The notes under the pieces: generated by a model
Seen by the model: the letters and a program-made list of their open reading frames with translations, nothing else
Told to the model about the DNA's origin: nothing
The model's database searches: none
Source of the DNA: Blepharisma stoltei ATCC 30299
Taxonomy: Eukaryota; Protista; Ciliophora
DNA: 64,000 nucleotides
Reading direction: 5' to 3'
Assembly: GCA_965603825.1 (NCBI GenBank)
Contig: CBFDEM010000035.1
Location: 716,131 to 780,130, forward strand
Shown here: positions 38,256-61,596 of the stretch, one piece after another
How the letters are laid out: each line of letters begins with the position of its first letter
Position numbering within the stretch: position 1 is the stretch's first letter
Program-made: the position numbers and the translations under genes

Positions 38256-38256
38256 A

Positions 38257-38991
38257 ACAGAAGGGTTCGCGTCATTGATTCAATTATCTAGAACCCCCCC
38301 AATTCCACAATTATTTGCTGTTCTGTCTATTATGAACACCACTCAAGGCATAGAGAATCCCTTGAGAACTTTAATTTCCAGCTTAAACAAAACCTTTAAA
38401 GATGTAATTTTTAAATAGTTTCATATAAAAAAAAACCATGATGCTAAAGAGTTATTTACAGTTCTTATTGGCGAAATAGAAGAAAATATCACAAATCTCT
38501 TTTGTATAGTAGTGCATAAAACTCTGCATTGCCATCATAATGAGAGATATAGCATTGACCATGCAGAAGAAATAACCGAGAAATTCCTGTTTTTATGTGT
38601 ACCATATGGTGATGTTGAAAGCTATTTTATAAGGCTAGGAGAAGATCAATGATTTGAAGGGGAAAATTCTTTAAGGTGTAAACGCTCAAATACCTTAAAA
38701 AGAGCTAGAATTTCGACTAATAAAATAGACTTTCCATCGAATTTGGCAATTTATGTGCCGCCATCAGAATCGAGGAATGAAAATATTAAGACGAGTTTTA
38801 TTCAAGAAGATAATCTATATCTCCTTTATGGAGTCATTGCGTACAATCCTTATATTCTTCATTATTTTAGTTATGTTTTGATCGAAAATAACTGGATAAA
38901 ATTCGATGATGAAACTGTTACTTATGAAGCGCCAAGGCTTGATTTTGCTTACCTGTTGTTTTATAAAGCCACCTTTCTGCTAGCTGATTAA
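38257..38991 (+). pseudogene. USP (C19) deubiquitinase fragment lacking the Cys box (USP-1; intron 38404-38418)
   Basis: Starts at TEGF just after the missing Cys box; HDAKELF, LYGVIAY..HYFSY..WIKFDD..AYLLFY; the rest of the frame is open. Confidence 0.8.
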
Positions 38992-39124
38992 TTCAAATAA
39001 TAATTAATCTATTCTGAGAATTTTAAAATCTGATAAAAAAAGTTAATATATTATTTAAAAAAGCATTGGGACGGAAAACCTGTGAATTCAATATAAGTAG
39101 TTAAATTTATAGAGTTATTATTAC

Positions 39125-40621
39125 CTAATTTCTTTTATAAAATAGCATATAAGCGTTATCAAAGTCAGGGTCTTCATATGATACTGATATATCATTATAT
39201 TTTTCTCATTCTCCTTCTGTATTTATTGTATATGCAATATAATGGCCATAAGTGCTCACTCCATAATAGCAAATTATGCCATACAAGCAATAACTTACAT
39301 TATTGAGCTCTATTTCCCTAAATTCCTTAAATTCCCTCCTTATGCTCATCAAGCTGCTAGTTCTTTTTGGCATATAAAATGCTAAATTTAAGTGGCATTT
39401 TATCTCCAAAACATTTAATGTCGTATCTGCTAATCTCTCACAGTTTTGGCAGTAAAGCTGATTTTGATTGATATATTTCTTAGGCAACCTTTTATCATCA
39501 AAGTATTTTTTAATGTTTAAATAATGCGGAGGAACAGTCATAAACAGCTCTGTTTCGCAATTATAGCTCTTATGAAGATGAGTGTTATGGCATTCGAACA
39601 TTTGATCAATATAGACTTCAAAAAAATGATTTTGAGGGTTTAATTCATTACAAAATGAAATAATTTGGACGAATAGCTCCTTTGCATCATTTTGCCCGTA
39701 TCCTAAAAACTGCATATAAATTACCATAGGAAAATTCTGCCCAAGATCAGTTTTAAAAGTTTCTGCATTTCTCTCAACGCTATTGGCTGAACGGTATTTT
39801 ATTGAATTTAATAATTTGTTGAGAGATATTTCTAGAGAGGTTTGCAGTGAAAGATTTTCTGAAAACCCTGGAGTTGAAGCTAAAATTTGTAGAACAGAAT
39901 TCAAGTAGCAAGTGTTTCCGATATTCGGGATTCCAATTTTTGAAAAATATCCTAATGGTCTTCTTTTTCTAATTTTTTCTTCTGAAGAATATTCTTCATT
40001 AGCTCGTTTTTTTGGTACTTTTTCTTTGATTTCGCTCTCATACTTAAAACATAAAAACGACACTTGAAGTTCTGGGGGAAATTTTTCAAGTTTACTTATG
40101 TTAAGTGAACAATTTAATTGAGATCAGTTGCCCTTGTCTTTGAAAAAAAGCTTTTTTGAAGGAAATGATATTGCAGACACCAAAGAATATTGATAATTCT
40201 GAATAGTGATTTCATTTTTGATGCTTAGCTGGGATTTTTTAGATGAGATGAATAAGAGATCATATTTTTTATTGATGTCTTTCTTTATTTCTTCCTCTTG
40301 CTTATAAGAATCATCAGGGAGGCAAACTCATAATTTAGCAATATCTTCAATCTGTCCGCTGCTCGTAAAAAAAATCTTTATAAAATGCTTCAAATAGCTA
40401 AATCAATCAAACAATCGCAAGTTAAAATATTTAAAAAACATTTTCTTAAAAATTTCATTATCCTGATTTCCCTCATCTAATTCCTTAAATAAATTTTGCA
40501 AAGCAATCATCCAATTACAGGTTGATGAAATTTTTTGTAAAAATGAGTATTCCTTGTTTAAATTGTGGAAAAAGTAGAGATTAGACTTAAAATTCCAATA
40601 TTGATCGTTATGTGCTTTCAT
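39125..40621 (-). CDS. USP deubiquitinase with a degenerate N-terminal domain (USP-2; intron 39710-39724; UGA=Trp)
   Basis: GIPNIGNTCYLNSVLQ, QNDAKEL, GHYIAY, W(TGA)EKYND, AYMLFY; continuous frame from ATG 40621. Confidence 0.85.
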
Positions 40622-40705
40622 TTTTATTTGTAGATTCAAAACTTTTAATAGCTTAAGTTAGCAAAAGCTCTTTTGATATGAATTATAAAGAAATTTATAT
40701 TTTAG

Positions 40706-41251
40706 TTAATTTTCGGATTTTATAAAACCTCCAACCATTTGCTTCATAACTTTAATGGTAGAGTTATTACCAATTCCTAATGTTTGCAGGTCTATTTCAC
40801 CATTGCTGGTTAGAGAAAGGTACTTATTTCCTTTTATAATTGTCAATTCTTGGTTTCCAAAAATCTGCAAGAATCTTTCATAGAGGTGCTTAAATTGCAG
40901 ATTTGGAGGAACTTGAATTGTCCTTTTAGTTCCTTCATTGTCTTCAATGACTATAGAAATTTGCTGAGGAGCTTGCACTGGAGGCTGTTCAGGAGCAGGT
41001 GGGTTGGGGTTTTGAGGCCTTTGAACACTAACAACGCGGATAACTGAATTATTGGTGATATTTAGTTGCTGCAGTGTGAGGTTTTGGGAGTTCGGACCGA
41101 TGTATTTATTTCCATACATGACTGTGAGTTCGGTTCCACCAAACATAGTCTGCAGATGTCTAAGAAGCTCAGAATATTGCCAATCACTCTTGCCTTGCAG
41201 AATTTTTGTTGTTCCGGTAGCATCTTCGATTCTTAAAGTAAGATTTGACAT
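40706..41251 (-). CDS. Tandem di-ubiquitin-like protein UBL-1, C-terminal VGG + 6-aa tail
   Basis: Two internally homologous ~72-aa beta-grasp-like units (LRIEDATG..TLQQLNITNNSVIRVV and IVIEDNEG..DLQTLGIGNNSTIKVM) with a Pro/Gln linker; ends KQMVGG-FIKSEN. Confidence 0.8.
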   Translation of the reverse strand: MSNLTLRIEDATGTTKILQGKSDWQYSELLRHLQTMFGGTELTVMYGNKYIGPNSQNLTLQQLNITNNSVIRVVSVQRPQNPNPPAPEQPPVQAPQQISIVIEDNEGTKRTIQVPPNLQFKHLYERFLQIFGNQELTIIKGNKYLSLTSNGEIDLQTLGIGNNSTIKVMKQMVGGFIKSEN

Positions 41252-41509
41252 ATTTTATAGAAACATGCACAATGGAAAATTAATAAAATTCATAAATTTA
41301 AGAGTTTTAAGAAAGCTATTTGCGGAATTTCAAAAAAATTAGTAACTTATAAGCGAATTTGGCTAGTTTTACTAATAGCATATTTTAACTACTCAGCTGC
41401 TTAAAGTTCAATTGTAATAAACTCGTTACTGAAATATAGAAACTAAGCCAAATTTCAATTCATAGGAATAAATGTGTTTCTATCTAATCAAAAATTATTA
41501 TTAAAAATT

Positions 41510-42180
41510 AGTTTATATTTCTGTAAGACACCAAATAAAGGAGATTCCAATCAGGACTTCATCAATTGACCACTTAATCGTTAAATTCCTACCATAAGCC
41601 TTTTTTATCATCTTTAGCAAACGCTATAAAATGGTTTCCATAATAGAATATCGCTCCAAATATATTATATCTGAACGCTTCACCACTGCAGCATACTTAA
41701 TGACTCAGACAAATTTTTAGTAATCCCTCCAAATTTTTATAGCAATATTGAAGAATACCTTCGAAGCTACAAAACCCAGCAATATTCAGAAGCAATGATT
41801 TATTAAAATGTAACTTATGCGGCTCAAATTCGATTTCCATGATGAATGAGTCCTTATAAACAAGCCAACTTACTTGATATTGTCATTTCAAGGCATAGAT
41901 GCTATAGTCAGACTTCCTAAAAGTTTGGATTTTGAAGAAATCGGTGCTCTCTGTTTGAGTTGTGTCTTATACAGTTCATGGGTCTTCTGGGCATTATACA
42001 ACATACACAAAAGAAAATTACTCATCAATACATTATAATGATAAGCATATGCAAATATTGATTTTCAGAATGGAATTCCTAGGGTTTATTTAGTTTTTTA
42101 TTTGCTGAATTCTTTGGTTTCTTACTAAAAGCACTGCTGCATATGTATATTTAAGCGAGCATTGTCCAAATATTGGAGCT
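41510..42180 (-). pseudogene. Heavily decayed USP (USP-3)
   Basis: His-box relic YNIFGAIFYYGNHFIAFAKD..W*EFND..LYLVSY with stops; upstream part barely alignable. Confidence 0.6.
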
Positions 42181-42220
42181 TTATTAATTATTAATAGTAA
42201 ATCTTGTTTCCTAAATGTTT

Positions 42221-42673
42221 TTATCCAAATGCATCTCTAAATGTTCTTTCTCTTGCTATATTGAATCATTCTTCTCTGCTTATTAAGCAAATATCAGCTG
42301 CCTCACACATAAATCCATGCTCTGGCTCAGGCCTGTTCAGTAATTCGATGAGATAGTCAATGATAACCCTGGGATGGCAGTTTGGGTTTCACATATGGTT
42401 AAGCAGAGAATGACAAACTCTTCCATTGCTAGGGAAAATATTTGGATGGAATATGGGTGTCTGAAAATATACTTTGGGAGGCTTGCTTGGGTATTTTTTG
42501 GAAAATTTTATTAAAAATTCAAAAAGACCGCCTTCAAAAGCAGTGCCTTCAGGCCCATTGAGATTTCCGAGTCATTCATAGTAGTCTCCCTGGTGAGTAT
42601 TCACAGAAACAAAAGGCTGAGGATTTGCTTGCAAATCATTCAGTTCAGTCATAAGTCGTTGCAACGCTGCCAT
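42221..42673 (-). CDS. Ubiquitin-conjugating enzyme E2-1 (150 aa; 3 UGA=Trp; absent from the ORF track)
   Basis: [67 protein letters not shown]. Confidence 0.9.
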
Positions 42674-43239
42674 ATCAAGCTTATAAATTGTAATTCTACA
42701 AAAGTTAATAGCTTTAAAGAAGTAAAAAAGTAATCTTTTAAATTTTCGTTAAACTATAATTATAAATTACCCCATTCCTTGCTCTAAAGTATATTTTATA
42801 GCTTAAAAATTTCTGCTTATAGATAGTTATTTCCTTGATGTATGCTCACAGGCAAGAAGCTTAGGATTACCTTCCAAAAACTTAGTTCAGGTATGGTTTA
42901 TATTATTCTGATCAATTAAAAGAAAAATGCTATATCATTTTTCCTCCTTGCATATATCCATTCTATAGAATCTCTTAGTAAAAGTAATAATCATGATTAC
43001 ACAAGCCTGAACTCTTATTTATAAGTTGTCACCATAGAAAAGCATGGCGATTTTATCCAACTTTTAAATATCAATATAGCAACTACGTATTATGGCTAAA
43101 TTTAAAGTTTATTTTATAGTTTATTCTGGATTAAAGGCCCATTTGTATATCATTAACTTAGCCCTAATAACTCTAAGCTTGGCTACAACTAATCAAAATT
43201 TTATTTATAAGTCAATTTGCATTCAATAGATTTATAAGT

Positions 43240-43719
43240 TTATCCCATAGCGTGTCTATACGTATGCTCTCTTGCCTTCGCTATAAATTCATCTTTACTT
43301 CTTTTAAGGACAGTGGTTGGGTCATGGGCATACCCACCAGCTGCATTTGGGTCATTTAATAAAGCAATTATATAGCTTATAATGGTCTTTGGAGTAAATC
43401 TACTATTCCACCCACCGCCCACGCCACCACGAAAAATCGGCAAGCAAACATTTCCATTTCCATTTCCACTGTCTGAATAAACATTTGGATGAAAAATAGG
43501 AGTAATAAATTTGCACGTAGGAGGGTTAGTTGGATAATCAGCAGGGAAATTTAGCTGAAATTCGAAAAGTCCTCCTTCATATGGAGTTCCAGGCGGGCCA
43601 TTGAGAGTTCCCTTCCAAAGTCTGAAATTGTTTCCATCAATATCAGCTGTCGCATAAGGTAAAGGATCAGATCTCATCTCATTCAAGTCTCTCATAAGTC
43701 TTTCGGTTGCGCTGTCCAT
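43240..43719 (-). CDS. Ubiquitin-conjugating enzyme E2-2
   Basis: GPPGTPYEGG, FPADYPTNPP, FHPNV..GNVCL; Gly-rich inserts around the active-site Cys. Confidence 0.95.
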   Translation of the reverse strand: MDSATERLMRDLNEMRSDPLPYATADIDGNNFRLWKGTLNGPPGTPYEGGLFEFQLNFPADYPTNPPTCKFITPIFHPNVYSDSGNGNGNVCLPIFRGGVGGGWNSRFTPKTIISYIIALLNDPNAAGGYAHDPTTVLKRSKDEFIAKAREHTYRHAMG

Positions 43720-44298
43720 TTTTAATTATTAAGATTCTATAATTTTTTGAGGTTTTGTGCTATGATAGATTGATTTTATTTTATTTCATTATATAAATTA
43801 TAGATATCTAGCAATTCTTTGATTGAAACTCTTGCAGAAGAAAATTCAGATGCAGAGAATTTCTTTAGGATTGCTAAATACCAAAAAATAATATGCAGCA
43901 TGAACGATTATGAAGAAAACCTTGAGACTTCTTATTTTCTTCTTTATTAATTTTCTGGAAATTTTGGTTATTTCTGTGATCGAATGACAGAGCTATTCAA
44001 TAGCAGCTCCCTCTGTCTATAGAGACACAAATAATTAGTTAAAATTCATAATTCTATAAATTTCGCCCTATTGAATATATAAAAATGCAGCAAGAAGAAA
44101 AAGCTTTTAAAATTTTGATTCAGCTGTTGAAATGATATAAATAATTGAGAATTTATAAAAATTACAAAATGCGAGATATTACTTTATAAATGCAAATTAA
44201 ATAATAACAAATAAAACCTTTAATGAAATTAAAAATTATTTATTCAATTAAATCAAAAATTTATTTATGACATATTATCCATCTATAATTTATAGAAT

Positions 44299-44862
44299 AT
44301 GCAGGGCAACGACAACTCAATGGTAACTATAACTTTAATCGACATCGATGGTCGGCCAGCAGAAAAAGAGATAAATCTTAATTGAACCTTCTCTTTATTG
44401 GCAAGACCTCTATTAAACGAATATGAAGCAGATAATCAAAGTCTCGCTCTGAATAATGGAACACTTTTAAGGTTGGTAGATCATCAAAGCGAAAAACTTC
44501 GTGACTTAGGATTTGAGGGCGAAAAAGTAGTAAAAATAATGCATGCAAAAAAAGGCTGTCCAGATATATCAGTTCGCGTTGAAAATTTGATAAACTCATC
44601 AAAATTTAGTGTTATGGTAAACCCTTTATCAAAATGTTTTGATGTCTGCCAAATGCTTGAAACCAGGACTGGATTACGTCTATTAAATAATAGAGAAGCT
44701 TCTGTTATGGTGAAATCCGTTTATTTGAATTTTGAAAACAATTATTATAAAACGCTGAGAGATTTAAAAATAAAGCACAATGAAAGTTTGAATATCTTGA
44801 AATTTGAGCGTGGAGGTCTTTATTGTGCAAAACGAATCAATTATTATAAAGCACCAAATTAA
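44299..44862 (+). CDS. Tandem di-ubiquitin-like protein UBL-2, C-terminal RGG + 14-aa tail (1 UGA=Trp)
   Basis: MQGNDNSMVTITLIDIDG..NWTFSLL..KLRDLGFEGEKVVKIMHAKKGC, then ISVRVEN..KTLRDLKIKHNESLNILKFERGG-LYCAKRINYYKAPN. Confidence 0.75.
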
Positions 44863-44929
44863 ATGAAAAGAGAGTCGAATTGAATAATGATTAAACTTTT
44901 AGTAATTTTCTGATATATTTCTTATAAAA

Positions 44930-45628
44930 TTCATGCTGAGTCTCAAAAATATGCCAAAAACATATATTTTAATTGTTTTCTTATTTAATTTCATGTATTA
45001 AGAAATTTTTGACCCAAGCATACAGTCTATTTTTCTTATTCCAAGCTTATTACGAATGCCTCTCTCTAACTTTTAAAAAGTATCAGTCTTTTTGGTATCA
45101 AAAACACGAACTTCTTCATTAAATCAAACATAATTCTTATTTCATCCTTAAGCACTCTCAGAGTAGCCGAACTAGTAAATCTAAAGCTTTTAAAGAAAAA
45201 TTTCCTTGTGTTGCCAAATCTAGTCTCTTTTTGTAATCTCTGATAGTTTCTTCTTTCTAAATTCGATGTCTTGGTTAATTTTAAATTTAGTTTTCATTAA
45301 ATTAGTGAACTCAGAAAGCTTCATATTGCTACTTCTTATTTCAAGAAATTTCTTCTATCTCCATATACTACAGAGATATGCAAATCAGGGATAATTTTGA
45401 CCTCTAAGCAGCTGCTGTTCATGATTTTAAATCAAAGAGAGATTTTTCGCCATCAAGGTTGAAATTGAGGTAGGTTGCATTTTTGAGATTAGTGAGGATT
45501 TTGAGATCATTAGTCAGGGAAAGGGCAGCTTGTATATTGTAATAGAGCTCAAAAAATATCATACTGGCTGAGGCTTTAACTACAAAGTTTTCTCCTCCAA
45601 TTACATGAATTCTAATCCTTATGGACAT
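44930..45628 (-). pseudogene. Multi-UBL gene relic UBL-3
   Basis: First unit MSIRIRIHVIGG..YLNFNLDGEKSLFDLK resembles UBL-2 (YLNFENN..TLRDLK); frameshift at ~45425, then further decayed units with stops. Confidence 0.55.
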
Positions 45629-46566
45629 TTTATCGCTAAATCTATAAATTTTTATTAAATATGAAATTTTGCTTTTTATATATTTTATTATAAAAATTTT
45701 AGACCTAATAAGGAGATCTGTTAATTAGAATTTTATAGCAGCTTGCAAAGATCACAAACTGGAAGAGAATGTAGTAATTTATATCTAATTTCTTGTTAAA
45801 TTTTGCTATCTCAAGAGATGTAATGAATTTTTATATATATTATATCCTGAATGAGGGATTTTTATTTGCTATCTTGATTATTTCTTCTACTTTAAGTGGA
45901 AATATTTATCTTTTCGCATAACCTGTAGAGTGCAGAGAACAATTTGTCTTGAATAAATAAATATAGAGAATTTGCCAAATTACTCTTGCAGGTTTAAATT
46001 TCAAATAATATAATTAGCATACGATATAGCTCGCTATCAACTGCTAATTCAAGTTTTGGTAAATGATTGAGTTTATAGTGGCTTAGCTATAATTTATAAT
46101 CTAAGCTCTTCAGCATTATCATTTATGGCTAAAAATATCTTCAAAATATCATATTTTTAACCTGAATAAATTTCTTTATTAGAGAAATAAAATATTTCAT
46201 ATTTTCGACTTAATTTTTTAAACTACTGCAAGTATATGATGCATCAGATTTAAATACTTATTTCATAAAACAAGAATAATTTCTTCATGATTATTATTTA
46301 ATTACAAAATTCAAATAAAAAGCTAGATTAGAAAATGCCTAAAATTTATAAATTGCTTAAAGCAGCAATGAATATAAATTTTTTCTTTATAGAAATTACC
46401 TTTCATATCCATATAATCTTATATGTATTTTATCACTTTATATAAATATTTTGGAAATAAAAGATAGATCTTCAATGAAATTTTGGGTTCTCATTGTAAG
46501 CTTATTAAGAAAATATAATAAAATCTCAAAATTAGATATTTTAATAATTTAATAACATCTGTAGAA

Positions 46567-47018
46567 ATGGAAAGACTTCAAGCTGAGCTTAACGCAATTC
46601 AATTGGAAAGTCATTCAGAATACTCTTTGAAATAGTTAATAACAATTTTTTCCACTGGAAAGGCACTCTTCAAGGGCCTCAAGACACTCCTTACCAAAAT
46701 GGAAAATTTAGGTTCGAAATTGTTTTCCTCAAAATTACCCTGCATCACCTCCTGATTTTTTTCAAAACAAAGATTTTTCATCCCAATATATACGAAGTCA
46801 ACGGAGAAACTTGTGTGAGGGTTCTAAATATTTCTTATAATAGAAATATCCCAGCTAGAATTATTATTGCTTATGTATTTGATCTGCTGGCCAATCCTAA
46901 TTCTGATGCAGGGTATGTCCAAGATTCAACTCATGCTTATTTGTATAATAGGCCAGGATATACATCTATGGCTACTGAGTGTTCGATCCTCCTTATCTTA
47001 AGAAGAAAAAGCTTATAA
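46567..47018 (+). pseudogene. E2 pseudogene (E2-3)
   Basis: MERLQAEL, HWKGTLQGPQDTPYQNG, IFHPNIYEVNGETCV, PNSDAGY; several 1-nt frameshifts. Confidence 0.85.
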
Positions 47019-47245
47019 TAGAAGTATATTTTTAAGGATTTTATAAAAATTATTTTTAATAATAAAAAAATTTTCTAAATAGGACTACATTGCATTTTTA
47101 GAAATTGTAATATTTTCCTGCTGAAGTTTTATCTTAAACTCAATAATCATTTTCCAAGAATTTAAACAAACTTTGCAAAGACATAATAATTCATTATTTG
47201 CTTAATGATAAATTTCCTAACCAAATCCAATTTAAAAATCCAAAA

Positions 47246-49138
47246 TTAATTTTTATTTTTATAGAAAAGCATATAAGCGCATCTAAAATTCGGCTTATCA
47301 GCAAAAGAAACCATCGAATCGTTATACTCAACTCATGAATTTTCAGCCTCACAATAAGTATAAGCAAAATAGTGCCCAGACAAATTGGTCCCAATATGAC
47401 AGATAACTCCATAAAGTCTATAATTGTTGTTTTCAATTGTTATATTGTCTTCTGGAATAAAAGAGGTTGGTGCCGGAGTCAAATAGAAAACTAAATTAGC
47501 TCGGGTCTCAATAGAAGTTGTCTCAATTGTCATATCTCTCAAGCAGTCACATTTGTCACAATAAAGAGCATTCGCACCTTGAAATCTCTCTGGATTCTTT
47601 AATCCATCTATATAGCTTTGGATACTCCTTATCCTATTTGTAGGTACCACAAAAAACGAGGAGCTTTCTTCTGGAGAGCCTGCATCATGCCCTCTACAAA
47701 TAAACCTTTTAACTCTTTTTATCAAAAACAAGTCGAAATTAGGCTTTTCGTCAGCGACTTTTGAGATGATAATTTGGAAAAGCTCTTTAGAGTCATTTTG
47801 GGTGCATCCTTGGAACTAAATAAAGGCTACCATTGAGAATTCTGAGCTTAATTCATTTTTGAATTGGGAAATAGCAGAGGCTAAATTGCCTGATTTTGAT
47901 TTCATTAGCTTAAAGATATTAGAAAGATATGTGAAAAAAGGTTGATTTATCCAGGCTACTATACCTTCAAAACCTTCAGTGCTAACTAGAATTTGCAATA
48001 CAGAATTCATATAGCAAGTATTTCCAATATTAGGTAGGCCGCTATTGCAGTTCGCCAGAGATTTAGGTTTTGGGGTACACACGATGCCATATGCGTAAGA
48101 ATTATCAGTTCTTTTGATATCATATGCCGCATTATAGGGGTGAACTATGTTTTTTCTATCATCTTCAAAGCGATTTCTTCGACTTCTCTCATTTCCGATT
48201 TCGCTAATATTGCTCCCAATCGACTTTTGGACAATACTCTCCGTCTTATTCTCTTTTGAAGCTTGGAAATTTTGTAAACTTCAAGCAGGCACAGGATTTG
48301 CTTGAGAGTTCTGATATTTGTCTTCTCGGTAATGCAGGTCCTTATTTCTTCCCCAATTATCTTGAACTGGGCTAGGACTTTTGTAAATACTATAGATAGC
48401 ATCATACTGAGAATTCTGAGGATTCTTTACATGATCGAAGTTTTGATTTTCGCTCTTTGGTACTCTATTAAGATTACGGCTTTGTCTCTCATCTTGATCT
48501 TGGGTTTTATTTCCAAATGTATAACTTACGTCATAATGTCTTTTATCTGTATAATGAACATTTAAATTAGTATCTTTTAGCGCTACATCTCGGGTGACCC
48601 TTGAATTGATCTTAATATTTTGGTTTGTAATTTTTAATTTTTCTTCGTTCTGGTTTGGCTTTTGTTGAGGTGCTTGAATAGTCTTTGAAGATCCAGAACT
48701 TTGTTTTGGTTCTTGTGGCTTTGATGGCGTGCTTACAACTTTGCTAATTCCACTTCGACTTTCAGGCTTGCTTACGCCAGCATTGCTAGAATTTCTTGAG
48801 TTTGCATTAGATGACAATTTATTGCTATAGATGATACTTCTTGCTTTATCTTCATTTCCTTTTTTCCCTGAACTTTGACTTAGTTCTTGCGGTTTTGGTG
48901 GCGTGCTTAAAACTCTGTTATTTCCACTTCGACTTTCAGGCTTGCCTAAACCAGTATTGCTTGAATTTCTTAAGTTTGCATTAGTTGACAATTTGTTGCT
49001 ATATGAGATACTTCTTGCTTCACCTTCATTTATTTTTTTCTCTGTTATAGATTGGGTTTTTGGATTAATTGGTCTTCTTGGAATATCAGCATTCAAATAA
49101 TTATGATTGCCTTTGACCGGACCTGGAAATTTTCTCAT
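47246..49138 (-). CDS. USP deubiquitinase with a long S/N/K-rich disordered N-terminus (USP-4; intron 47816-47830; UGA=Trp)
   Basis: GLPNIGNTCYMNSVLQ, QNDSKEL, CDKC, GHYFAY, W(TGA)VEYND, AYMLFY; three track ORFs join in frame. Confidence 0.85.
48708..49030 (-). repeat. 174-bp-period internal tandem duplication in the USP-4 N-terminus
   Basis: ARSISYSNKLSTNANLRNSSN..KPESRSG..STPPKPQE occurs twice. Confidence 0.85.
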
Positions 49139-49999: not shown

Positions 50000-50938
50000 A
50001 TGATGATATTAAATTTTCTTAGGAAGATTTTTGGCTACTTTTTCGATTCTCCAAGGCCTATAATAAGTATACAAAATTTACCAACTCTAAGTATTGTTCC
50101 TGAAAAAAAGCTAGTATTTCCTATTTGAGCATCCCAGCCAGATGGCATAAAATCTCATAAACAGGGACTCCCTAATGTTGGGAATACCTGTTATTTAAAT
50201 GCTCTTCTACAAGTATTATCAAGCACTCCAGATTTTGTTCAAAAATTACCTTCAAATTCAAAAATATGTGTTTCACTGTCAAGAGTTATATCATGAGTCC
50301 AACAGAAAGGCAGACTTTCAATTTTCGCTGAAATAAAAAAGCTTCAGCTATATTTATTTCAAGAATTCCGCATGGTAATAAATACGTAGTTTAACGAGCA
50401 CTCAGAAAATGACCCAAAAGAGCTTTACTTATCATTAATGGGCCTTTTGCCAGATTCAAGCGATTTCTCTATAATTTTATATAAGAAAATTCTATGCAAA
50501 CTATGCCACAATTTTTCAAATTTAGAAGAGCCATCTCTCTTTTGCATTCTAAAAAATCCATCAAAAAAAGAAATTGAAGAGAAATTAAAAAATCTCGAAG
50601 AAGAAAAAGAGTATAAAGGGGGAAATTTATTGTATTGTGAAAATTGCTCGGCAAACAGGGAAATGGTAATGAGCACCTTTGGCATAAATATACCAAACAT
50701 TTTTGTATTTTATATTGGGAATGTGTTGGGCAAAAGAGCTCAAGGAGCTTATAATTTCTTTTATTGTGGTGATAAATTTGAGCTATATGGGGTAATATGC
50801 TATTATAATAGTGGGTGTAGGCATTATATTGCATATACATTAGATAATGCAGAGTGAATGCAATATAATGATGACCATATTAGCTACTCATCACCTGATT
50901 TTGAGCATGCTTATATGTTATTTTACAAAAAGACATAG
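50000..50938 (+). CDS. Minimal USP deubiquitinase (USP-5; intron 50375-50389; UGA=Trp)
   Basis: GLPNVGNTCYLNALLQ, ENDPKEL, CENC, RHYIAY, W(TGA)MQYND, AYMLFY; start codon uncertain. Confidence 0.75.
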
Positions 50939-51012
50939 CAAGCTAAATATACCTATTTATTATTTTAAAATAAAGTGATAATTGTAGAATGTATAAAAAT
51001 ATCCTTAATAAA

Positions 51013-51380
51013 ATGATTCATATAGCGCAAGAATTTAATAAGCTCAAACGAACTACATAAAGGAATCGAGTTAATATAGGACAAGTTTTTCCATTGGAAT
51101 GGACTGCTGATAGGCCTTAGAAACTCCTTTGAAGTTGGCAAATTTCGATTCAAGCTAATTTTCTATTCCAATTCTCCAACTTCTCTTCCGAATTTTTCTT
51201 CAAAACAAGAACTTTCCACCCAAATGTGGACTCTGACGGGAAAGCATGCACACAAGTTCTCAAATTCACTTTGAGGCCAAATATATCAATAAGCAGCATC
51301 TTGAATTCTATATGCGTTTTGCTAAGAGAGCCCTAACCTGATGCAGGGTATTTTAACGACGCAAGCCTTAGAAAGCAATG
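51013..51380 (+). pseudogene. E2 pseudogene (E2-4), closest to E2-6
   Basis: FHWNGLLIG, FHPNVDSDGKACT, SILNSICVLL, DAGYFND; stops and frameshifts. Confidence 0.85.
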
Positions 51381-51384
51381 ATAG

Positions 51385-52114
51385 GTTTACAAATTTCGTG
51401 AGGAGCATAGACAGCCACTCTTTTGCAGTGGCTTTATATGGAGTTTATAATATTATGAGAGAAAAAGAGATATCGAGCAGAATTTAAGGATTTTTAAAGA
51501 TCAAGCTAACCAAAAATTTTCATTCGTAAGCTCTATGCAGCTTGATACATTTGGCCACCAAGATTCAAAAGAGTTTTTAGTGTGCCTTTTATCAACATTA
51601 GAAGAGCTTTCTAGCGTAAGTTTGTCAAATATCACTCCAATTCAAGAGTCTATATGCATGAGTTGTATAAAGTCCCTACCATAATCAAGAAAATCAAAGC
51701 TTTTTTACGATTCCAAATAACCAAAAATCAAATCAGATGCATTTAAGAGACTTCAATGCAAGGTATAGAATTTTAGAGGAGATAATATACTCCATTGTCA
51801 ATTTTGTGAATCTCTGAGGAATATAAGTATTAAAACTAAGAGAATTTTATTCTGAAATGCTAATTTTTTATCTGCCAGCTTATAAAAATTTTCCTAATGC
51901 CAAAATTGAGGGAAAACTGAAGTTAGAAGAGTATGAATTCAGTCTCTATGGTTTTATATGAAGCTATGGCTCTGGAAATATTGGGCATTATACAACTCAT
52001 ATTAAAGATGGGAATGTTTGGAGATTATATAATGACTCAACTGTAAGTGATAAAAGCTATGATGCAGGAAATAGCTATTTAGTTTTTTATTTATTAAATA
52101 AGTCGAGGACTTAA
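51385..52114 (+). pseudogene. USP fragment without Cys box (USP-6; intron 51526-51540)
   Basis: HQDSKEF, LYGFI..GHYTTHIKDGNVWRLYND, YLVFY; frameshifts; abuts the E2-4 relic. Confidence 0.75.
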
Positions 52115-52308: not shown

Positions 52309-52749
52309 ATGCAACGACTTATGGACGAGTTTATCAATCTGCAAGACAGACCAGAACCTTATATCACTATAAACATAATAAATCACTCATTTTACAACTG
52401 AAAAGGAACACTTAATGGCCCTGATGGAACCCCATACGAAGGTGGCCTATTCGAGTTCGAAATTACATTTCCACCAAATTTCCCAACAAGTCCTCCTGAA
52501 TTTCTTTTTAAGACGCCAATTTTTCATCCAAACATTAGATCTGATGGGCACGTTTGTTGTGAAATCTTTTCAAATGCCTGAAACCCAAAAGTCCCTGTTA
52601 GAAACATCATTTCGTATGCAGTAGGATTATTAAATGAGCCTGAACCAAGAGCAGGATACCAAGGACCTGCCACAGAATTATGCTTGAAGAATCGAGAAGA
52701 TTTTAATAGGGAAGCAAGAAGATGGACTTTTGAGCATGCAATGGGGTAA
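52309..52749 (+). CDS. Ubiquitin-conjugating enzyme E2-5 (146 aa; 2 UGA=Trp; absent from the ORF track)
   Basis: MQRLMDEF..NWKGTLNGPDGTPYEGGLF..FPTSPP..IFHPNIRSDGHVCCEIFSNAWNP..ARRWTFEHAMG. Confidence 0.92.
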
Positions 52750-53666: not shown

Positions 53667-55589
53667 ATGTCTGACGCACGAGTTTGAAAATTTTGCATCG
53701 CAGTCAATCTCACTTATTCCCTTAAACAATTTATCAATTTCGAAACCAATCTGTTGCTGTCTGAAACCTTAAATCAGGTACTAAATTCCTTACAATGAGA
53801 TGAACAAAATCAAAGGGAGCTAGCCTTTTTACGAGATGAGCTAGACCAAGTTTTAATAGATAATAGCTGAACTATTTCATGCATTGAAAAAGATCTTATT
53901 GATTTACCATTACAACAAAAGATCTTCTGTGCTGCTGATAAAATAATGATTTTAAAAGATCTTCCATCGAGAATTTGCTCAATTAAAATAAAAGAAAATG
54001 AAAATAGCTATTTTCTTGTCGCAGCGCTTTTAGAAAATGGCAAAGCACTTTATCATTGGAAAGATGAAGATTGATACAAAATTGGGTTTGATAAGTCCAT
54101 GCCTGATGAACCGCATTATTTTTACTTTTGCGAGGCTCCTCTACATGATATAGAGCGGATTTTAAACTCTAAATGCTATGAAAAAATATATTCGCTGCTT
54201 AGAGACTCGCATACCGAAAATGAGTCTCTACTAGATATTAGTGAAGCATCTGAAATAAACCAAAGAGCTAGCATAGATGAAAGTAAAGAAAGCAATGAAA
54301 TTATTGAAAAAGGGGTAAAAGATACAAAAAATCAAGAATTACAAACTGAAATTGACAATGAGCAAGTCTGCAAACTTAAGCTATCAATTAAAAATTTACA
54401 GCAAAATGTAAAAAAACTCGAAGGTTCAAATCAGAAATCGCAAAACCTAATAAATTCTTTGAAACATGAAATTCATGAGCTTAAGGAGCAAAGAAAAGCC
54501 TCAGAAGATATAAAAAATAAATATGAATCGGAAATCGCTAACCTTGAAAAAGAAAAGAAAGAAATGCATGACACCATTCAGCTCCTTCATAATCAAGGAC
54601 AACAAATGAGCGCGGGCCATAATTTCCAACTAGTCCAATTGGAAAAATTAAATCACGATTTAGTTTATGAGAATGAATCATTAAGAGAAGAATGCAGAAA
54701 ACTTAAAGAAAGTCAAATAATTGAGCTACCTCCCAATCGTAAGCACGGCCTTCCTAATTTAGGAAACACCTGCTATTTGAATTCTCTTTTACAAATATTT
54801 TCGAGTACTCCTGCCTTTGAGGCTGCACTTCAAAGTTTAACCCAGCCATTTTCAAAATCTCTTAAAGACCTTTTGCTCAATATGAAAAAGGACAACAGCC
54901 CTCGGACTATTGGAGGCTTGACAAAGTTATTTTTATCAAATCTGGTGCAAAATTATCCGTTTGTAAAAGTTATTTAGCTTGTAGCTTACACTCAGCAAGA
55001 TCCTAAAGAAGTTTTGAATATGATTTTAAGCAAATTAGGAGAAGAACAAAGGAATTTTGATATTTTTTCAATTGTTTTTGAGCAAAACCTAATATGCAGT
55101 AAAAAGCACAAATCAGCTTATTCAGATGTCAGCTCATTTTTAGTAATTCCTCCACAATATAAAGAATACCCAGAGAATTTTATCCTCAGCAAAATTAATA
55201 ATCCTTCAAAGATTAAATCATTTTGCAGTCCATGCAAAAAAGAAGCTGATATTAGCATTTCTGCGACTCTACCCGTCTACCCACAACATCTTATCTTTTA
55301 TTTTCCAGCTTCTCCTCAGGCTCTAAAACCTTATATTCATTTTAATAAAAACAATTGATATGAATTATATGGAGCTATTTGCTATTATCAAGAAGAAAGC
55401 TTTCATTATACTGCATTAACTAAAGATGGAGTTGATTGAAATGAGTATAATGATGAGCACGTTGAAGCTAAAAGCATAAACCCATCCCTAGTATTTTTAG
55501 CATTTTATTCTAAAGCACCTCCATCAATTCCTGGTACAAAGGCTGCTCCCATCCCTACATCTGTTAAAAAAAAGGAGAAATGATTCTAG
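53667..55589 (+). CDS. USP with degenerate N-domain + coiled coil (USP-7; intron 54963-54977; UGA=Trp)
   Basis: Continuous frame from ATG 53667; GLPNLGNTCYLNSLLQ, QQDPKE, FHYTAL, W(TGA)NEYND, FLAFY. Confidence 0.85.
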
Positions 55590-55633
55590 CGTATATTTCG
55601 CATTACTTTCTATAATAATTATTTTAGAATAAA

Positions 55634-56071
55634 TTAAACTGCATACATATGCGTCCACATCCTAGCTATTCTTTCATATTCCTCTTTATCAGCGCTTCTG
55701 ACTGCAGTTGCATCATTAAGGTATCCATCCTCAGTGCTAGGTTCACTCATCAGCACACAAATGCTATCAAGGATCGATTTTACTGTTGTTGTGCTTTGCC
55801 ACTTGTAATTAAGCAGCATTGTGCAAGCTTTGCCGTTCGAGTCCACGTTTGGATGGAAAATAATCGTTTTGAAGTAAAACTCTGGAGGACTTTGAGGGAA
55901 ATCTTGAGGGAAAAGAATCTCAAATTGGAATCTTCCGCCTTCAAAAGGAGTTTCTGGTGGGCCTATTAGTACCCCACCTCAGTGATAGAAATCATTGTTG
56001 ATTAAATAAACTAATAAACCGTCAGTTGGATCTTCACAAAATTTTGCGAAATCGGCCTGGAGCTTTTGCAT
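55634..56071 (-). CDS. Ubiquitin-conjugating enzyme E2-6 (145 aa; 1 UGA=Trp)
   Basis: HWGGVLIGPPETPFEGG, FPQSPP, FHPNVDSNGKACTMLL..W, ARMWTHMYA; head-to-head with the E1 gene. Confidence 0.92.
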
Positions 56072-56393
56072 ATATGTAGAATTATAAATAATAATTTTTT
56101 GCATTAGGGCCATAAAGAAATTAAAAAGTTTAAAATAAATGAATTAGGAAATGCATCTTGTGTTTTTATTGCTTCATTCTTATATGATAGAGTCTTCATG
56201 TCTTTCGCTAACTATTTTTCTATTTATCCAGAAATTGCTAAATTAGTCTTAAGTCCCTTAATATTTCTGGACTCAGGAATTTTGCCTAAGCTGATTTTCC
56301 CATAAACCCATCCTTACTTTACCTCGTTGCTCATATTTTCATCTTTATTCACACTTTTAACTGAGAACTAAGGATTCTACATTTTTGTTAATA

Positions 56394-59300
56394 ATGTCAA
56401 GTCAAGATCATCTCTATTCGCGCTCAATCGCTGCTATTGGTATGACGACTCAAAAAAAGCTTTTCACCATCCGAGTCTTGATTTCTGGTCTCCGAGGAGT
56501 CGGTCTAGAAATCGCTAAAAACTTGATCTTAGCTGGTCTCAATACAGTAACTTTGCATGATGATTCTATAATTTCGCTTTATGACTTAGGGACCAACTTT
56601 TACATAAGCGAGTCTCATATAAACCAAAACCGAGCTGAATCAGTTGTCTCCAAACTCCAAGAACTCAACCCAAACGTCTCAGTAAACATCCATAAAGGAG
56701 AAATTACCCAAGAAGTTATTTCTCAACACTCATTGGTGCTTCTTACAGAAAGTGATGGCGCCACGCTCAGAAGGGTGAATTCCATTTGCAGAGAGCTAAG
56801 TCCTCAAGTAGGTTTTGTGTCTGTTGAAGCCTGAGGAGTAGCTGGGCACATTTTTGTGGATTTTGGGGACAATTTCGAAGTTTCTGATAGAAATGGGACA
56901 GACCTGAAGAGTTATTTGATTACCAATATAAGCAAAAGCAATCCTGGAGTAGTAATGATAGATGAGAAGCAAAGGCAAATGCTTCAGAATGGAGAATATG
57001 TAAGGTTCAAAGAAGTGGAAGGAATGACTCCTCTTAATGATGGCAGAGAACGAATGGTGACTTATATAGACCAGCACAGCTTTTCAATAGATGAAGATAC
57101 CACAGAATACCCAGATTATGTAAAATATGGAATCGTTGAAGAGGTCAGAAAACCTTTCCATTATGATTTTCGGCCTTATGAAGTTTCTATTAAAAATCCT
57201 GAAGAATTAAAGCCTTTCATACAGTCTGATTACTCAAAAGAAAACAGGCCTCCTCATCTACATTTAGCTATGCTTGCTATCAGAAAATTCCAAGAAGTTC
57301 ATGGATTTCTCCCTGAAGTCCACAATGAAGACCACGCAAATCTCTGTGTGATTTATGCAAGGGAAATCAGAGAGGTTTCTTCACAAGAGTTTGGCATAGA
57401 TGCAATTGATGAATCCATCATCAAAAACGTCGCGAAGTATGCAAGACTGCAAATTCCTCCAGTTACTTCAATATTTGGAGGAATTGCGGCTCAAGAAGTC
57501 ATAAAATTCACTGGAAAATTTACTCCAATCCAGCAGTGGTTTCATATAGACTGGTTTGAGCTAATCCAGCCAACTGCAAGCATTGTTGACTCAAGGTATC
57601 ATGATCTCCAAGCCATTATTGGAGAAGAAGGAGTCAATAAGCTTAAATCAGTCAATTTATTTATGGTCGGGTCTGGGGCTTTGGGATGTGAATTGCTAAA
57701 GCTTTTTGCATTGTCTGGAATTTGCTGTGGGTCTGGAGAACTTACTGTCACTGACGACGATAACATAGAAGTCTCCAATCTGACGAGACAGTTTTTATTC
57801 AACATGACTAATGTGGGACAATCCAAAAGTGAATGCGCCACAAGGATAGCGAAAATTATGAACCCAGAAATTAACGTCACTGCTTTGAAAAACAGAGTTT
57901 GCCCAGAAACAGAAAACTTGTTTAACGATAGGTTTTGGGGGAAATTAAATGCAGTTTTTGGGGCTGTGGATAATGTACATGCACGAGTTTATGTAGATTC
58001 TAAATGTGTTTGGTATAAAAAGCCACTCTTTGAAAGCGGAACAGAAGGGACAAAAGCGAATTCTCAAGTAATCATTCCGTTTTTAACTCAAACATATTCA
58101 GATATTCCACAAATGTCTGAAGAGAAAATCCCTGAGTGTACTTTAAAGTCTTTTCCATATGCAATTTCTCACTGTATTGAGTGGTCTCGAGAAAAATTGT
58201 CAGATTACTTTACTTCTGGCCCTGGAGAGCTAAATAAGTACTTGGAAAACCCTGAGGCTTATATGCAAAAACTACGAAGCATGAGGAACGCTGCAATGCA
58301 AGTTACCCAGCTAAAGCAGCTAAAAGAATATTTAGAGCTTTCTAAAATAAGCAGCTTTGACGATTGTATTGCTGTCGCAAGACAAAAACTTAATGAGCTA
58401 TTTAATGAAGAAATTAGATCATTATTACATCAATTTCCCCCTGATGCAAAATGGTCAGAAGGTGGCGATTTTTGGTCAGGAACCAGGAGATTACCTGAGC
58501 CTTGCATTTTTGACACAGAAAAAGAAGATCATATAGGATTTATAGAAGCTTATGCAAATTTGGTAGCCTTTAACCTTAACATTCCACAGAATAGAGACAG
58601 GAATTACATAAAAGAAGTGGTGTCTAAGGTCCAAGTTAGGGAGTTTGTCCCAAGAAAAGTCTATATACAATTAGAAAATAGCGAGGATCAGCAGCCGCAA
58701 CCAACAGGAGAAACTGACATAAAATTAAGAGAAGAATTGCTGAGCTGGACTGAAGGATTTTCATTAGAAAATGCCAAGCCTATGACACCAATTGCATTTG
58801 AAAAAGATGATGATACTAATTTCCACATTGATTTTATCCACACTGCTTCAAATTTGAGGGCAAATAATTACAAAATTTCAACTATAGAAAGGCACAAAAC
58901 CAAGGTTATTGCTGGAAAAATCATCCCAGCTCTTGCAACTACAACTGCAGTTATTGCGGGAATCGGGGTAGCTGAATTTATTAAATATACTCTTGAGTTA
59001 GAATTAGAAAAAATGAGGGATAGCTTTATGAACTTGGCGAGTCCGTTTATCCTTTTCCCAGAACCTCGGCCTGCAATAGTGATTAAATCTGTTGAATATG
59101 ATGAAATTTTAGCTGCTCCCAAGAGGGCATATAATGACGGCTTTACCAAATGGGACGATATTGTCATTGATGGGCCTTGCACAATGGGAGAGCTAGTTGA
59201 CACTTTGAAAGAAAAATACAAGGTTTCCCCATTGCAGATTGCCTGTGGAAAGTTCTGCTTGTTTAATCAATATTCAAGAGATAATAAAGATGAGCTACTT

Positions 59301-59447
59301 AAAAGAGAAGTTTATGAGCTATACAAAGAAATTAGTGGAGACAAAACAGAGGGTAAAACGTCGGTTGGTCTCATATTATTTGCAGTCTCAGTTGAAGATA
59401 AAGCTCAAATGATGCTTCCACCTTTGAAGTATATTTTCAGTCATTAA
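56394..59447 (+). CDS. Full-length UBA1/UBA6/UBA7-type E1 activating enzyme (1017 aa; UGA=Trp at 56832-56834)
   Basis: YSRS..GLRGVGLEIAKNLILAG, GSGALGCELLK, DDDNIEVSNLTRQFLF, DNVHAR, catalytic PECTLKSFP..HCIEW, FEKDDDTNFHIDFI, AGKIIPALATTTA, C-terminal UFD. Confidence 0.97.
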
Positions 59448-59580
59448 CATTTAATTAAAATATATCGAAGTATTATTTCGCTTATTATTAGTTTAAATAT
59501 TTAACAATTTATAAAGATAGAAAATTAGATCATTTATTTTCCATTTTTACTTAATTTTATTAATTAATTGTAGATTTGAA

Positions 59581-61596
59581 ATGAAAATTCCTGAGGATCA
59601 GAAATACTGAGATTTATGCGCATCTATTTGCTTAATTAATACTATATCAGAATATCTTCATAATGATGAAGATCAAATTAGCAGTTTAATGCAAATAGAG
59701 CAAGCTCTAAAAGATTCTCAAAAATTTAACTTGAAAGAAGAATCAATAAAACAGCTGTGAGATCATACTGAAACGAAAAAAGATAGCATTTGAAGCTGGC
59801 TCAACATTATTTTGGATGGTTGTTATCTATGAAATTTGCTTTTTTATCGAGAAGAAAATACAACTTATATTTCTTCATTAAATTATTGAAAGTTAGCCTG
59901 AGGGGAATATATGAAAAATAAGTCTGCTTACTTAGCTTGTATCAGCAGTACAGATAAGCCTAAAGTCTTATTAGAAAATAGCTATGGTAAATTCTTGCTG
60001 GTGTTAGCATTTTCTAATTCTGAAAAAATTATGTATTATTTTAAGAAAAATTCATGATTTGCGTTAGGGAATAGAGAAGAAAGCATGGTAACTTTTCTCC
60101 CTGATATGTATTTATTGTACATAAGAACGGAAGATTGTCAATTTCACGAAGATATTAATTACGCTGAACAATTTTTGATTTTGAATAGCATGGATAACCT
60201 ATCAATTTTTTCAAAATTGGAACATTCATATTATTCTGAGCGATATGAGAAATCAAGAGACATAGAGACATTGACTAACGAAAATGATATTCTTAAAAAA
60301 TCGCTCAATAAAGAAGCACATAAATATTCGGAGAGACTTGAGAATCAAGAAAGAGATATAGAAAGATTGACTGCTGAGAATGAAACTCTTAACAAATCAG
60401 TAAATGAAGCTTCAGGTGCAATGTCAAAACAAAAATCTGAAATTGAAAAACTTAAAAATGAAATTTCTAATTTAAAACAGCTATTAAATAATAAAGAAAG
60501 AGAAGCAGAAAATCTAGAAAAAGCTAATAAAGCATTGGAATCTGAGCTCAACAAGCAAAAGCAAAGCAATAACTCGCTCCAAAGTGAATATGATAAGTTA
60601 ATGCAGTATAATAATAATTTATCTTCGAAAAACAAAGAGCAAGTGCAATCCGAGCTTGAAAAGTTTTATAGCAAGATAAATCAAGCCTGTGATGAACTTA
60701 ATCAAGGCATAATCTCAACAATTCATTGTCCAGAAGCTGAACTAGTTCGTAAAGATCACACCCTCAAACAGTATGACCTTTCAGCAAGTTCTCATTTGAA
60801 AGAATCAAAAACTTCTATATTTCCTAATATTAAACAGGGAATTCCCAATCTCGGAAACACTTGCTATTTGAACTCAGTTTTGCAAATCTTCGCAAGCACA
60901 AATACGCTTTTTGAATTTATTGGTACAAAAGAGGATAGCTTGTCAATAGCCTTATATAATGTTCTTTTAGCTATTCGAATGGGAAGCTTTGAAGCATTAG
61001 TAAGATCATTAAAATCAGAGATTGACGCAGTCTTTCCGATGTTCTTGCATGGAGAGCAACAGGATGCAAAAGAACTACTCGTAACACTATTTGATCATAC
61101 TTTAGATGCAAGAGCAAAATCATTATTCTCTTTTTGCTACCATGAGAAGCTGCCTTGCGATAACTGCGGAAAAGTATCACTTCTAATAAGGGAGGAAAAT
61201 TTACTTCTTATTCCAAGCCATGAAACAAGTATTACATCTTTTCTTAATAAAATAACAGAACCAAAAAGCATTCAAGGTCAAGGACTGAAATGTGAATCAT
61301 GCAATCAATTTTCAATTTTTAAAACAGAAATCACTAGTATTGAGTCTCCACATTACTTAATTTTCTACTTGTCTAGGTCAGAAAATGGAAACCCAAGGCC
61401 TTATAATTTTTTAGAAGAGACTTTAACATTAAATAGCCAAACTTACTGCTTGTATGGAGTTATTTGCTATTATAAGAATGGAAATGGAGGGCACTATACA
61501 GCATTTACAAGGGATGGAGACCAATGGAACAATTATAATGACAATATTGTTGGAATTAAAACCTTTGACCAAAATGATGCTTATTTAGGGTGTTAG
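59581..61596 (+). CDS. USP with degenerate N-domain + coiled coil (USP-8); intronless; 3' end overwritten by telomere
   Basis: Frame open from ATG 59581 with 7 UGA=Trp; GIPNLGNTCYLNSVLQ, QQDAKEL, GGHYTAF, WNNYND; ends AYL-GC-stop inside telomeric repeats. Confidence 0.85.

What the first reader, a model, noticed from the sequence alone, without database searches (positions are those of the whole stretch)
38257..61596. Self-contained subtelomeric ubiquitin-like conjugation cluster (E1 + 6 E2 + 3 tandem-UBL + 8 USP)
Seen: over ~23 kb, every recognisable gene belongs to one enzymatic cycle. There is one complete E1, four intact and two decayed E2s, two intact and one decayed tandem-UBL genes, and five intact or nearly intact plus three decayed USPs. 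Much of this is invisible in a standard-code ORF track. Known: eukaryotic E1/E2/UBL/DUB genes are normally dispersed; physical clustering is typical of prokaryotic ubiquitin operons and antiphage UBL systems (Bil, CBASS Cap2/Cap3). A di-UBL with its own E1, E2 and USP parallels vertebrate ISG15/UBA7/UBE2L6/USP18. Inference: this is a private, fast-evolving UBL pathway, plausibly for defence or conflict given its position and turnover. I do not know of such a pathway described in ciliates.
Basis: partly seen in the sequence, partly recalled or inferred. Interest (0 to 1): 0.96.

Follow-up and report, generated by a model that had tools for sequence, protein, structure and literature searches.

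The report
Ciliate's clustered private ubiquitin-like system
The ciliate Blepharisma stoltei keeps a spare, altered set of ubiquitin-style tagging genes (activator, carriers, tags and erasers) side by side in clusters, and their sequences suggest a separate tagging pathway not described before, although no experiment has shown it yet.

Summary
The gene count is confirmed. The window is Blepharisma stoltei macronuclear DNA (UGA=Trp, 15-nt introns): 1 E1, 4 intact + 2 broken E2s, 2 intact + 1 broken tandem UBL, 8 USPs. The E1 is not the housekeeping UBA1, which lies unclustered on C28. It is a long-branch UBA1 paralogue that keeps its ATP motifs and catalytic Cys but has lost the crossover-loop Asp that binds ubiquitin Arg72 (kept in 116 of 117 database homologues). 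Six of seven linked UBLs have a non-Arg residue at position 72, and all end in Gly-Gly plus a short tail. All 8 linked E2s lack the UBE2D Phe62 E3-binding residue; I found no E3. Genes are under purifying selection, and several are transcribed and spliced. 'Self-contained' and 'subtelomeric' are overstated: the 23 kb is a near-identical copy of the end of a larger C15 cluster, and one of six paralogous clusters, three not shown to be terminal. Best reading: a lineage-specific UBL conjugation cycle, analogous to ISG15/UBA7 but unrelated by descent (0.7). Its role in defence is untested. The scan's first readers noted similar clusters on other contigs of this genome.

The parts
38220..38241 (.). 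Junction between a START-like-gene flank (paralogues on C38, C52) and the cluster copy
   Evidence: no depth over it in the second-strain run X12
38242..38991 (+). USP-a, 5'-truncated here (Cys box lost at the junction); complete on C15; 15-nt intron 38404-38418
   Evidence: intron spliced out in RNA-like run X9
39125..40621 (-). USP-b, intact triad, N-terminal extension, in-frame 15-nt intron 39710-39724
   Evidence: low RNA coverage broken at the intron
40706..41251 (-). UBL-1, two beta-grasp domains, proline-rich linker, Gln at position 72, Gly-Gly plus 6-residue tail
   Evidence: AF2 pLDDT 78, Foldseek to di-ubiquitin and ISG15, RNA depth 22 and 58
41514..42096 (.). USP-c remnants: minus-strand piece 41514-41672 and frameshifted plus-strand piece 41761-42096; still transcribed
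42221..42673 (-). E2-a, intact (HPN, catalytic Cys)
   Evidence: RNA coverage
43240..43719 (-). E2-b, intact, UBE2D-like
   Evidence: RNA coverage
43813..44103 (+). USP-gene fragments copied from the upstream part of the C15 cluster; begin at the 20-nt indel that separates the C35 and C15 copies
44299..44862 (+). UBL-2, di-UBL, Phe at position 72, Gly-Gly plus 13-residue tail; paralogue on C9
45007..45628 (-). UBL-3, frameshifted copy of the intact tri-UBL at C15:665413-666147
46567..47000 (+). E2-c, frameshifted copy of the intact E2 at C15:666615 (95% DNA identity)
47246..49138 (-). USP-d, intact triad, low-complexity N-terminus with a 174-nt duplication; intron 47816-47830
50000..50938 (+). 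USP-e, compact, intact triad; intron 50375-50389
50990..51400 (+). E2-d, broken (stops and frameshifts)
51362..52114 (+). USP-f, broken
52309..52749 (+). E2-e, intact
53667..55589 (+). USP-g, N-terminal domain, coiled coil, intact triad; intron 54963-54977
55634..56071 (-). E2-f, intact, head-to-head with the E1; the pair is kept on C11
56394..59447 (+). E1, 1017 aa, full UBA1 architecture, catalytic Cys582 intact, crossover loop altered (D573Q, P574M) and L551E
59581..61596 (+). USP-h, N-terminal domain, coiled coil, intact triad, no intron; last residues replaced by telomere here, complete on C15
61585..64000 (+). Telomere, 8-nt repeat

Best explanation
A lineage-specific UBL conjugation and deconjugation cycle built from duplicated ubiquitin-system parts and kept in paralogous gene clusters. 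Shown in sequence: a UBA1 paralogue with intact chemistry and an altered residue-72 pocket; mono-, di- and tri-domain UBLs with Gly-Gly plus a tail; UBE2D-like E2s with catalytic Cys; compact USPs with intact triads. Inferred mechanism: cluster USPs clip the tails to expose Gly-Gly; the one intact cluster E1 adenylates and thioesterifies these non-Arg72 UBLs instead of ubiquitin; it hands them to cluster E2s, which transfer them to substrates without a canonical RING or HECT partner or through an unlinked, co-diverged E3; other USPs remove the marks. E1-less clusters would use this E1 in trans. The most likely role is defence or conflict (about 0.4 on its own), inferred only from gene turnover and analogy with ISG15.
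For: Canonical UBA1 on C28 changes 2 of 165 invariant columns, the window E1 changes 16; Asp573 is kept in 116 of the 117 database homologues outside the cluster clade. Arg72 binds an acidic pocket of the crossover loop and is the E1 specificity filter (PMC12355090). Residue 72 is Q, F, C, Q, K, K, R in seven cluster UBLs, yet Gly-Gly is kept in all at 20-44% domain identity. Cluster E1s form a clade with support 100 on a 0.82 stem inside the clade of heterotrich-type UBA1s. dN/dS is 0.17-0.28 for E1, 0.14-0.16 for E2, 0.20 for UBL, 0.31-0.41 for USP. 13 of 14 USPs share one phase-0 15-nt intron and 12 of 13 full models keep the triad. Phe62 is replaced in 8 of 8 E2s. UBL-1, E2-a, E2-b, USP-a and USP-b have RNA-like coverage with a spliced intron. 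A second strain about 3% divergent carries the part of the cluster that I laid.
Against: No biochemistry. The pocket residue equivalent to human Gln608 is kept. One UBL on C11 keeps Arg72, and a canonical polyubiquitin gene sits beside the C18 cluster. Of four cluster E1 loci three are dead or broken (C11a lacks the Cys, C11b is frameshifted, C8 is fragments). USPs outnumber all else and keep the QxDxxE motif, so many may act on ubiquitin. No counterpart was found outside Blepharisma. E1 transcription is indirect.
Confidence: 0.7

Rival explanations
1. A second ubiquitin E1 with its own E2 set (like Leishmania UBA1b or UBA6). It still charges ubiquitin, and the UBLs are decoys, inhibitors or minor substrates.
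For: Leishmania UBA1b is only 28% identical to UBA1a, yet forms a ubiquitin thioester and differs in E2 choice (PMC7647121). Gln558 is kept. Polyubiquitin lies next to the C18 cluster.
Against: The near-invariant Asp of the Arg72 pocket is lost in all three cluster E1s. Gly-Gly plus tail is kept in all seven very divergent UBLs.
Confidence: 0.13
2. Mainly an amplified USP array. E1, E2 and UBL genes were carried along by segmental duplication and are decaying; no working conjugation cycle remains.
For: About 50 USP-family loci against one intact E1; many pseudogenes; duplicated mosaic ends; a LINE-like element borders the C15 cluster.
Against: Purifying selection on E1, E2 and UBL; E2 catalytic residues intact in 8 of 8 models; the E1-E2f pair is kept on two contigs; transcription and splicing.
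Confidence: 0.1
3. The cycle works, but serves a selfish or self/non-self role (a linked tag with its own eraser acting as poison and antidote at conjugation) and not pathogen defence. This shares the biochemistry of the best explanation.
For: Tight linkage of writer, tag and many erasers is what such elements need; the RNA-like runs seem to hold both strains, as in the published conjugation series (PMC9942806).
Against: Both strains carry the part of the cluster I could compare at about 3% divergence; no positive selection seen.
Confidence: 0.15
4. The clusters came from a giant virus or from bacteria as a unit.
For: The nearest non-Blepharisma hits to the compact USP domain lie on contigs with giant-virus-like gene content, at 24-30% identity.
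Against: The E1 nests inside ciliate UBA1s with support 100; E2s are UBE2D-like; genes have host-type introns and UGA-Trp codons; that search only saw proteins of 139-443 aa, which favours compact viral USPs.
Confidence: 0.03

Closest known systems
ISG15 / UBA7 / UBE2L6 / USP18 (vertebrates)
   Same: Di-UBL precursor with a tail after Gly-Gly, a dedicated UBA1-derived E1, its own E2 and USP.
   Different: ISG15 keeps the ubiquitin tail with Arg72 (PMC12355090); uses E3s such as HERC5 and its genes are dispersed (own knowledge). Here several UBLs, many E2s and USPs, clustered, independent origin, 13-16% identity.
FAT10 / UBA6 / USE1
   Same: Di-UBL with a second UBA1-like E1 and a dedicated E2.
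   Different: FAT10 is made mature and has no known eraser, and UBA6 also charges ubiquitin (own knowledge). The window E1 groups with ciliate UBA1s and scores higher to human UBA1 (570 bits) than UBA6 (518).
NEDD8 / SUMO discrimination at residue 72
   Same: Matched change of UBL residue 72 and the E1 pocket separates a pathway from ubiquitin (PMC12355090).
   Different: Those E1s are ancient heterodimers; this one is a single-chain UBA1 paralogue.
Bacterial ubiquitination operons (Bil, Bub, CBASS Cap2/Cap3)
   Same: E1, E2, UBL and deconjugase genes side by side; multi-domain UBLs (bioRxiv 10.1101/2024.11.21.623966, abstract only).
   Different: Here both strands, separate transcripts with introns, eukaryotic UBA1/UBE2D/USP parts, USP (C19) erasers and not JAB; analogy only.
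PUBL of the apicoplast; Leishmania UBA1b
   Same: Protist-specific UBL or second UBA1-like E1 (PMC7600729, PMC7647121).
   Different: PUBL is close to ubiquitin and organelle-targeted; UBA1b charges ubiquitin. Neither is described as clustered in the passages I read.

Membership tests
Canonical ubiquitin E1 (UBA1 orthologue) | IAD-FCCH-4HB-AAD-SCCH-UFD architecture, ATP motifs, catalytic Cys | tested here: met
Canonical ubiquitin E1 (UBA1 orthologue) | Acidic crossover-loop pocket for Arg72 | tested here: not met
   D573Q, P574M; Asp kept in 116 of 117 database homologues
Canonical ubiquitin E1 (UBA1 orthologue) | Orthology: the genome's conserved UBA1 | tested here: not met
   C28 gene holds that place; the window E1 is in a separate clade
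Type I conjugatable UBL | Beta-grasp fold | tested here: met
Type I conjugatable UBL | C-terminal Gly-Gly at the ubiquitin 75-76 position, exposed by processing | tested here: met
   position met in 7 of 7; processing itself not tested
Type I conjugatable UBL | Activation by an E1 and covalent attachment to substrates | not testable with these tools
   needs thioester and conjugate assays
ISG15 pathway | Ubiquitin-identical tail with Arg72 | tested here: not met
   PMC12355090
ISG15 pathway | E1 orthologous to UBA7 | tested here: not met
   UBA7 400 bits against UBA1 570; nests among ciliate UBA1s (UBA7 itself was not in the tree)
ISG15 pathway | Induced by infection | not testable with these tools
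   only contigs of RNA-like runs were available
UBE2D / UBC4-5 E2s | UBC fold, HPN motif, catalytic Cys | tested here: met
UBE2D / UBC4-5 E2s | E3-binding loops (Phe62; Ser-Pro-Ala 94-96) | tested here: not met
   Phe62 replaced and the motif altered in 8 of 8; residue roles from own knowledge
USP (C19) proteases | Cys box, His box and Asn/Asp triad | tested here: met
   12 of 13 full models; Pfam UCH
Bacterial Bil/Bub operons | Prokaryotic operon with minimal E1 and JAB-type deconjugase | tested here: not met
   full-length UBA1-type E1, USPs, introns, mixed strands

The most novel reading that the evidence does not exclude
A eukaryote has independently evolved a complete, physically clustered, E3-free UBL immune or conflict pathway, a ciliate counterpart of ISG15 organised like bacterial antiphage ubiquitination operons, in which one reprogrammed UBA1 paralogue serves a diversified panel of UBL tags, E2s and about 50 erasers in six clusters.
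Probability: 0.3. Interest if true: 0.92.

Novelty: new variant of a known kind. Interest (0 to 1): 0.74.

Why it matters
New eukaryotic UBL pathways with their own E1 are rare, and their genes are normally scattered. This one offers a recent, natural case of how an orthogonal pathway splits from ubiquitin: the E1 pocket, UBL residue 72 and the E2 surface all changed, and every part can be expressed and tested. It could be a first handle on innate immunity or genetic conflict in heterotrich ciliates, and a source of an orthogonal tagging toolkit.

Tried and rejected
Housekeeping-UBA1 reading: rejected. Relatives outside Blepharisma: UBL-1 word search found only itself; an 80-position UBL profile over 1.84 billion representatives returned this genome's UBLs, then repeat-rich ubiquitin-type proteins, of which I inspected eight; a metagenome scan with the E1 alignment gave one 39% hit. 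Neighbourhoods of four other heterotrich-type E1s, including a long-branch one that also lost the Asp and Cys (P0098), show no E2/USP/UBL cluster. RING and HECT regex scans of the window and of the C15 and C11 clusters were empty; none of 150 scored RING hits falls in a cluster, but only 0.7 was expected, so that test is uninformative. The USP N-terminal domain could not be identified: pseudo-USP idea inconclusive (7.1 bits against 6.5 for shuffles), AF2 pLDDT 36, no Pfam. Positive selection: none seen in pairwise dN/dS. Literature searches found no description of such a cluster; the library lacks most subscription papers.
Full report
Source. The genome has 41,464,486 bases in 64 contigs, an 8-nt telomere repeat, and proteins named Blepharisma stoltei in NCBI. 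This matches the published B. stoltei ATCC 30299 macronuclear assembly with UGA=Trp, 15-16 nt introns and many alternative telomere addition sites (PMC9942806). The window is C35:716131-780130.

Observation. They cover 76% of 38257-61596 and the gaps hold no ATG-started ORF above 55 aa. The USPs need one 15-nt intron, at the same phase-0 position about 70 codons after the Cys box in 13 of 14 family members, which points to one expansion. Their catalytic domains average 32% identity, yet 12 of 13 full models keep the triad.

Boundaries. Window 38242-61588 equals C15:667859-691225 apart from one 20-nt indel. On C15 the cluster runs on for about 14 kb upstream with further USPs, an intact tri-UBL, a mono-UBL and an E2, and ends next to a LINE-like element. 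The left junction removes the Cys box of USP-a; the telomere replaces the last codons of USP-h; both genes are whole on C15. The flank left of the junction has 92-97% paralogues on C38 and C52. A second-strain run (X12, about 3% divergent) shows the C15 form and no depth over the junction; the own-strain run is ambiguous, and cluster depth there (190-217) is not double that of the flank (250). So the C35 copy is a recent end exchange or partly an assembly product; I could not decide. The cluster itself is real either way.

Genome-wide picture. USP-family hits fall in six intervals: C15 654-691 kb, C11 1157-1179 kb, C8 218-247 kb, C9 489-509 kb, C12 2-26 kb, C18 546-564 kb. Related UBLs, E2s and E1s or E1 fragments map to the same intervals. 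14 of 89 E2 hits lie there against 0.4 expected. C15, C11 and C12 are at contig ends; C18 is internal; for C8 and C9 the contig length is not known to me.

The E1. It has all UBA1 domains, the ATP-binding motifs and Cys582. A canonical UBA1 on C28 is 48% identical, changes only 2 of 165 invariant columns, and has no cluster hits near it. The window E1 changes 16, among them D573Q and P574M in the crossover loop (human Asp623, Pro624 by the alignment) and L551E. Asp573 is present in 116 of 117 database homologues outside the cluster clade; the exception also lacks the catalytic Cys. Arg72 of ubiquitin binds an acidic pocket of this loop and residue 72 separates ubiquitin from NEDD8 and SUMO (PMC12355090); that Asp623 is part of the pocket is my own knowledge. 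The three cluster E1s form a clade (SH-aLRT 100) on a 0.82 stem within the heterotrich-type UBA1 clade; an AU test rejects a sister position to the C28 gene (p 0.008), so the duplication may be older than the genus, though long branches weaken this. C11 carries one copy without the catalytic Cys and one frameshifted copy; C8 has fragments; C55 has a separate pseudo-E1. The window/C15 gene is the only intact one found.

The UBLs. UBL-1 folds from its single sequence as two beta-grasp domains (pLDDT 78) and matches di-ubiquitin and ISG15 structures at 13-17% identity. UBL-2 gives ubiquitin-clan matches by features and structure. Seven cluster UBLs (one frameshifted) all have Gly-Gly at the 75-76 position followed by 1-13 residues; residue 72 is Gln, Phe, Cys, Gln, Lys, Lys and, once, Arg. 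Loss of the pocket Asp and loss of Arg72 in the linked tags is the main evidence for a private pathway. It is a correlation, not an assay.

The E2s. Best matches are UBE2D. All eight intact models keep HPN and the catalytic Cys, and all replace Phe62, alter the Ser-Pro-Ala loop and replace the Asp-Pro-Leu gate by Gly-Tyr/Phe. These are the canonical E3 contacts (own knowledge). No RING or HECT motif was seen in the window or the C15 and C11 clusters.

Selection and expression. Pairwise dN/dS is 0.14-0.41 for all four gene classes; some dS values are near saturation, and the E1 pairs involve the damaged C11 copies. In two runs guessed to be RNA, coverage is confined to genes, the USP-a intron is removed, and UBL-1, E2-a, E2-b, USP-b and the USP-c pseudogene are covered. 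Contigs cannot show levels or co-regulation.

Mechanism and rivals. Most likely the USPs mature the tags, the one E1 activates non-Arg72 UBLs, cluster E2s conjugate them with no canonical E3, and the USP array erases them (0.7). Rivals are a second ubiquitin E1 (0.13), a decaying USP array with passengers (0.1) and a viral or bacterial import (0.03). The biological role is open: defence about 0.4, a selfish or mating role about 0.15.

Novelty. It works like ISG15/UBA7 and is laid out like bacterial ubiquitination operons, but fails membership of both. I found no description in the searchable literature and no counterpart outside Blepharisma, which partly reflects poor sampling of UGA-Trp heterotrichs. 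First readers of this scan noted similar clusters on other contigs, unchecked. I rate it a new variant of a known kind, interest 0.74. Spliced and UGA-containing proteins were searched only as pieces by reference; the joined search was left out.

Noticed in passing
window 10436-11767 (+), 17085-18419 (-), 24888-26213 (+): Three close paralogues with a Cys/His-rich N-terminus, and Kelch repeats shown for one; a similar N-terminus heads a catalytically dead USP at C15:659347-660408. Possible substrate adaptors.
   Followed up: partly
C15:650462-653704 (L013): LINE-like element (endonuclease-like and reverse-transcriptase-like ORFs, read by eye) borders the C15 cluster.
   Followed up: no
C55:255878-258295 (L006, L010): Pseudo-E1 that has lost the ATP motifs and catalytic Cys (68 of 165 invariant columns changed) yet keeps a long open frame.
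   Followed up: partly
L027:10001-13042 (P0098): A UBA1 paralogue in the Stentor-like clade has independently lost the crossover-loop Asp and the catalytic Cys; it is not in a cluster.
   Followed up: partly
C18:546040-546921: Canonical polyubiquitin with a divergent fourth unit sits directly beside the C18 USP/E2/UBL cluster.
   Followed up: no
C27:183374-185902; C35:594416-596691; C12:46140-49009: Other arrays of two-domain ubiquitin-like genes, some a canonical unit followed by a divergent one, outside the USP clusters.
   Followed up: no
window 43811: The only difference from the C15 copy is a 20-nt deletion, at the start of a USP fragment copied from upstream C15.
   Followed up: partly
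L028-L032: Nearest non-Blepharisma compact USPs (24-30% identity) lie on contigs with giant-virus-like genes (D5-type primase, ribonucleotide reductase).
   Followed up: partly
window 9687-9804 and 24516-24592: Short stretches 82-84% identical to the last 130 bases before the C11 telomere.
   Followed up: no
window 53667-54200, 59581-60200; L022:3899-4450: Long USPs share an unidentified N-terminal domain of about 190 aa ahead of a coiled coil; no Pfam match and no confident fold.
   Followed up: partly
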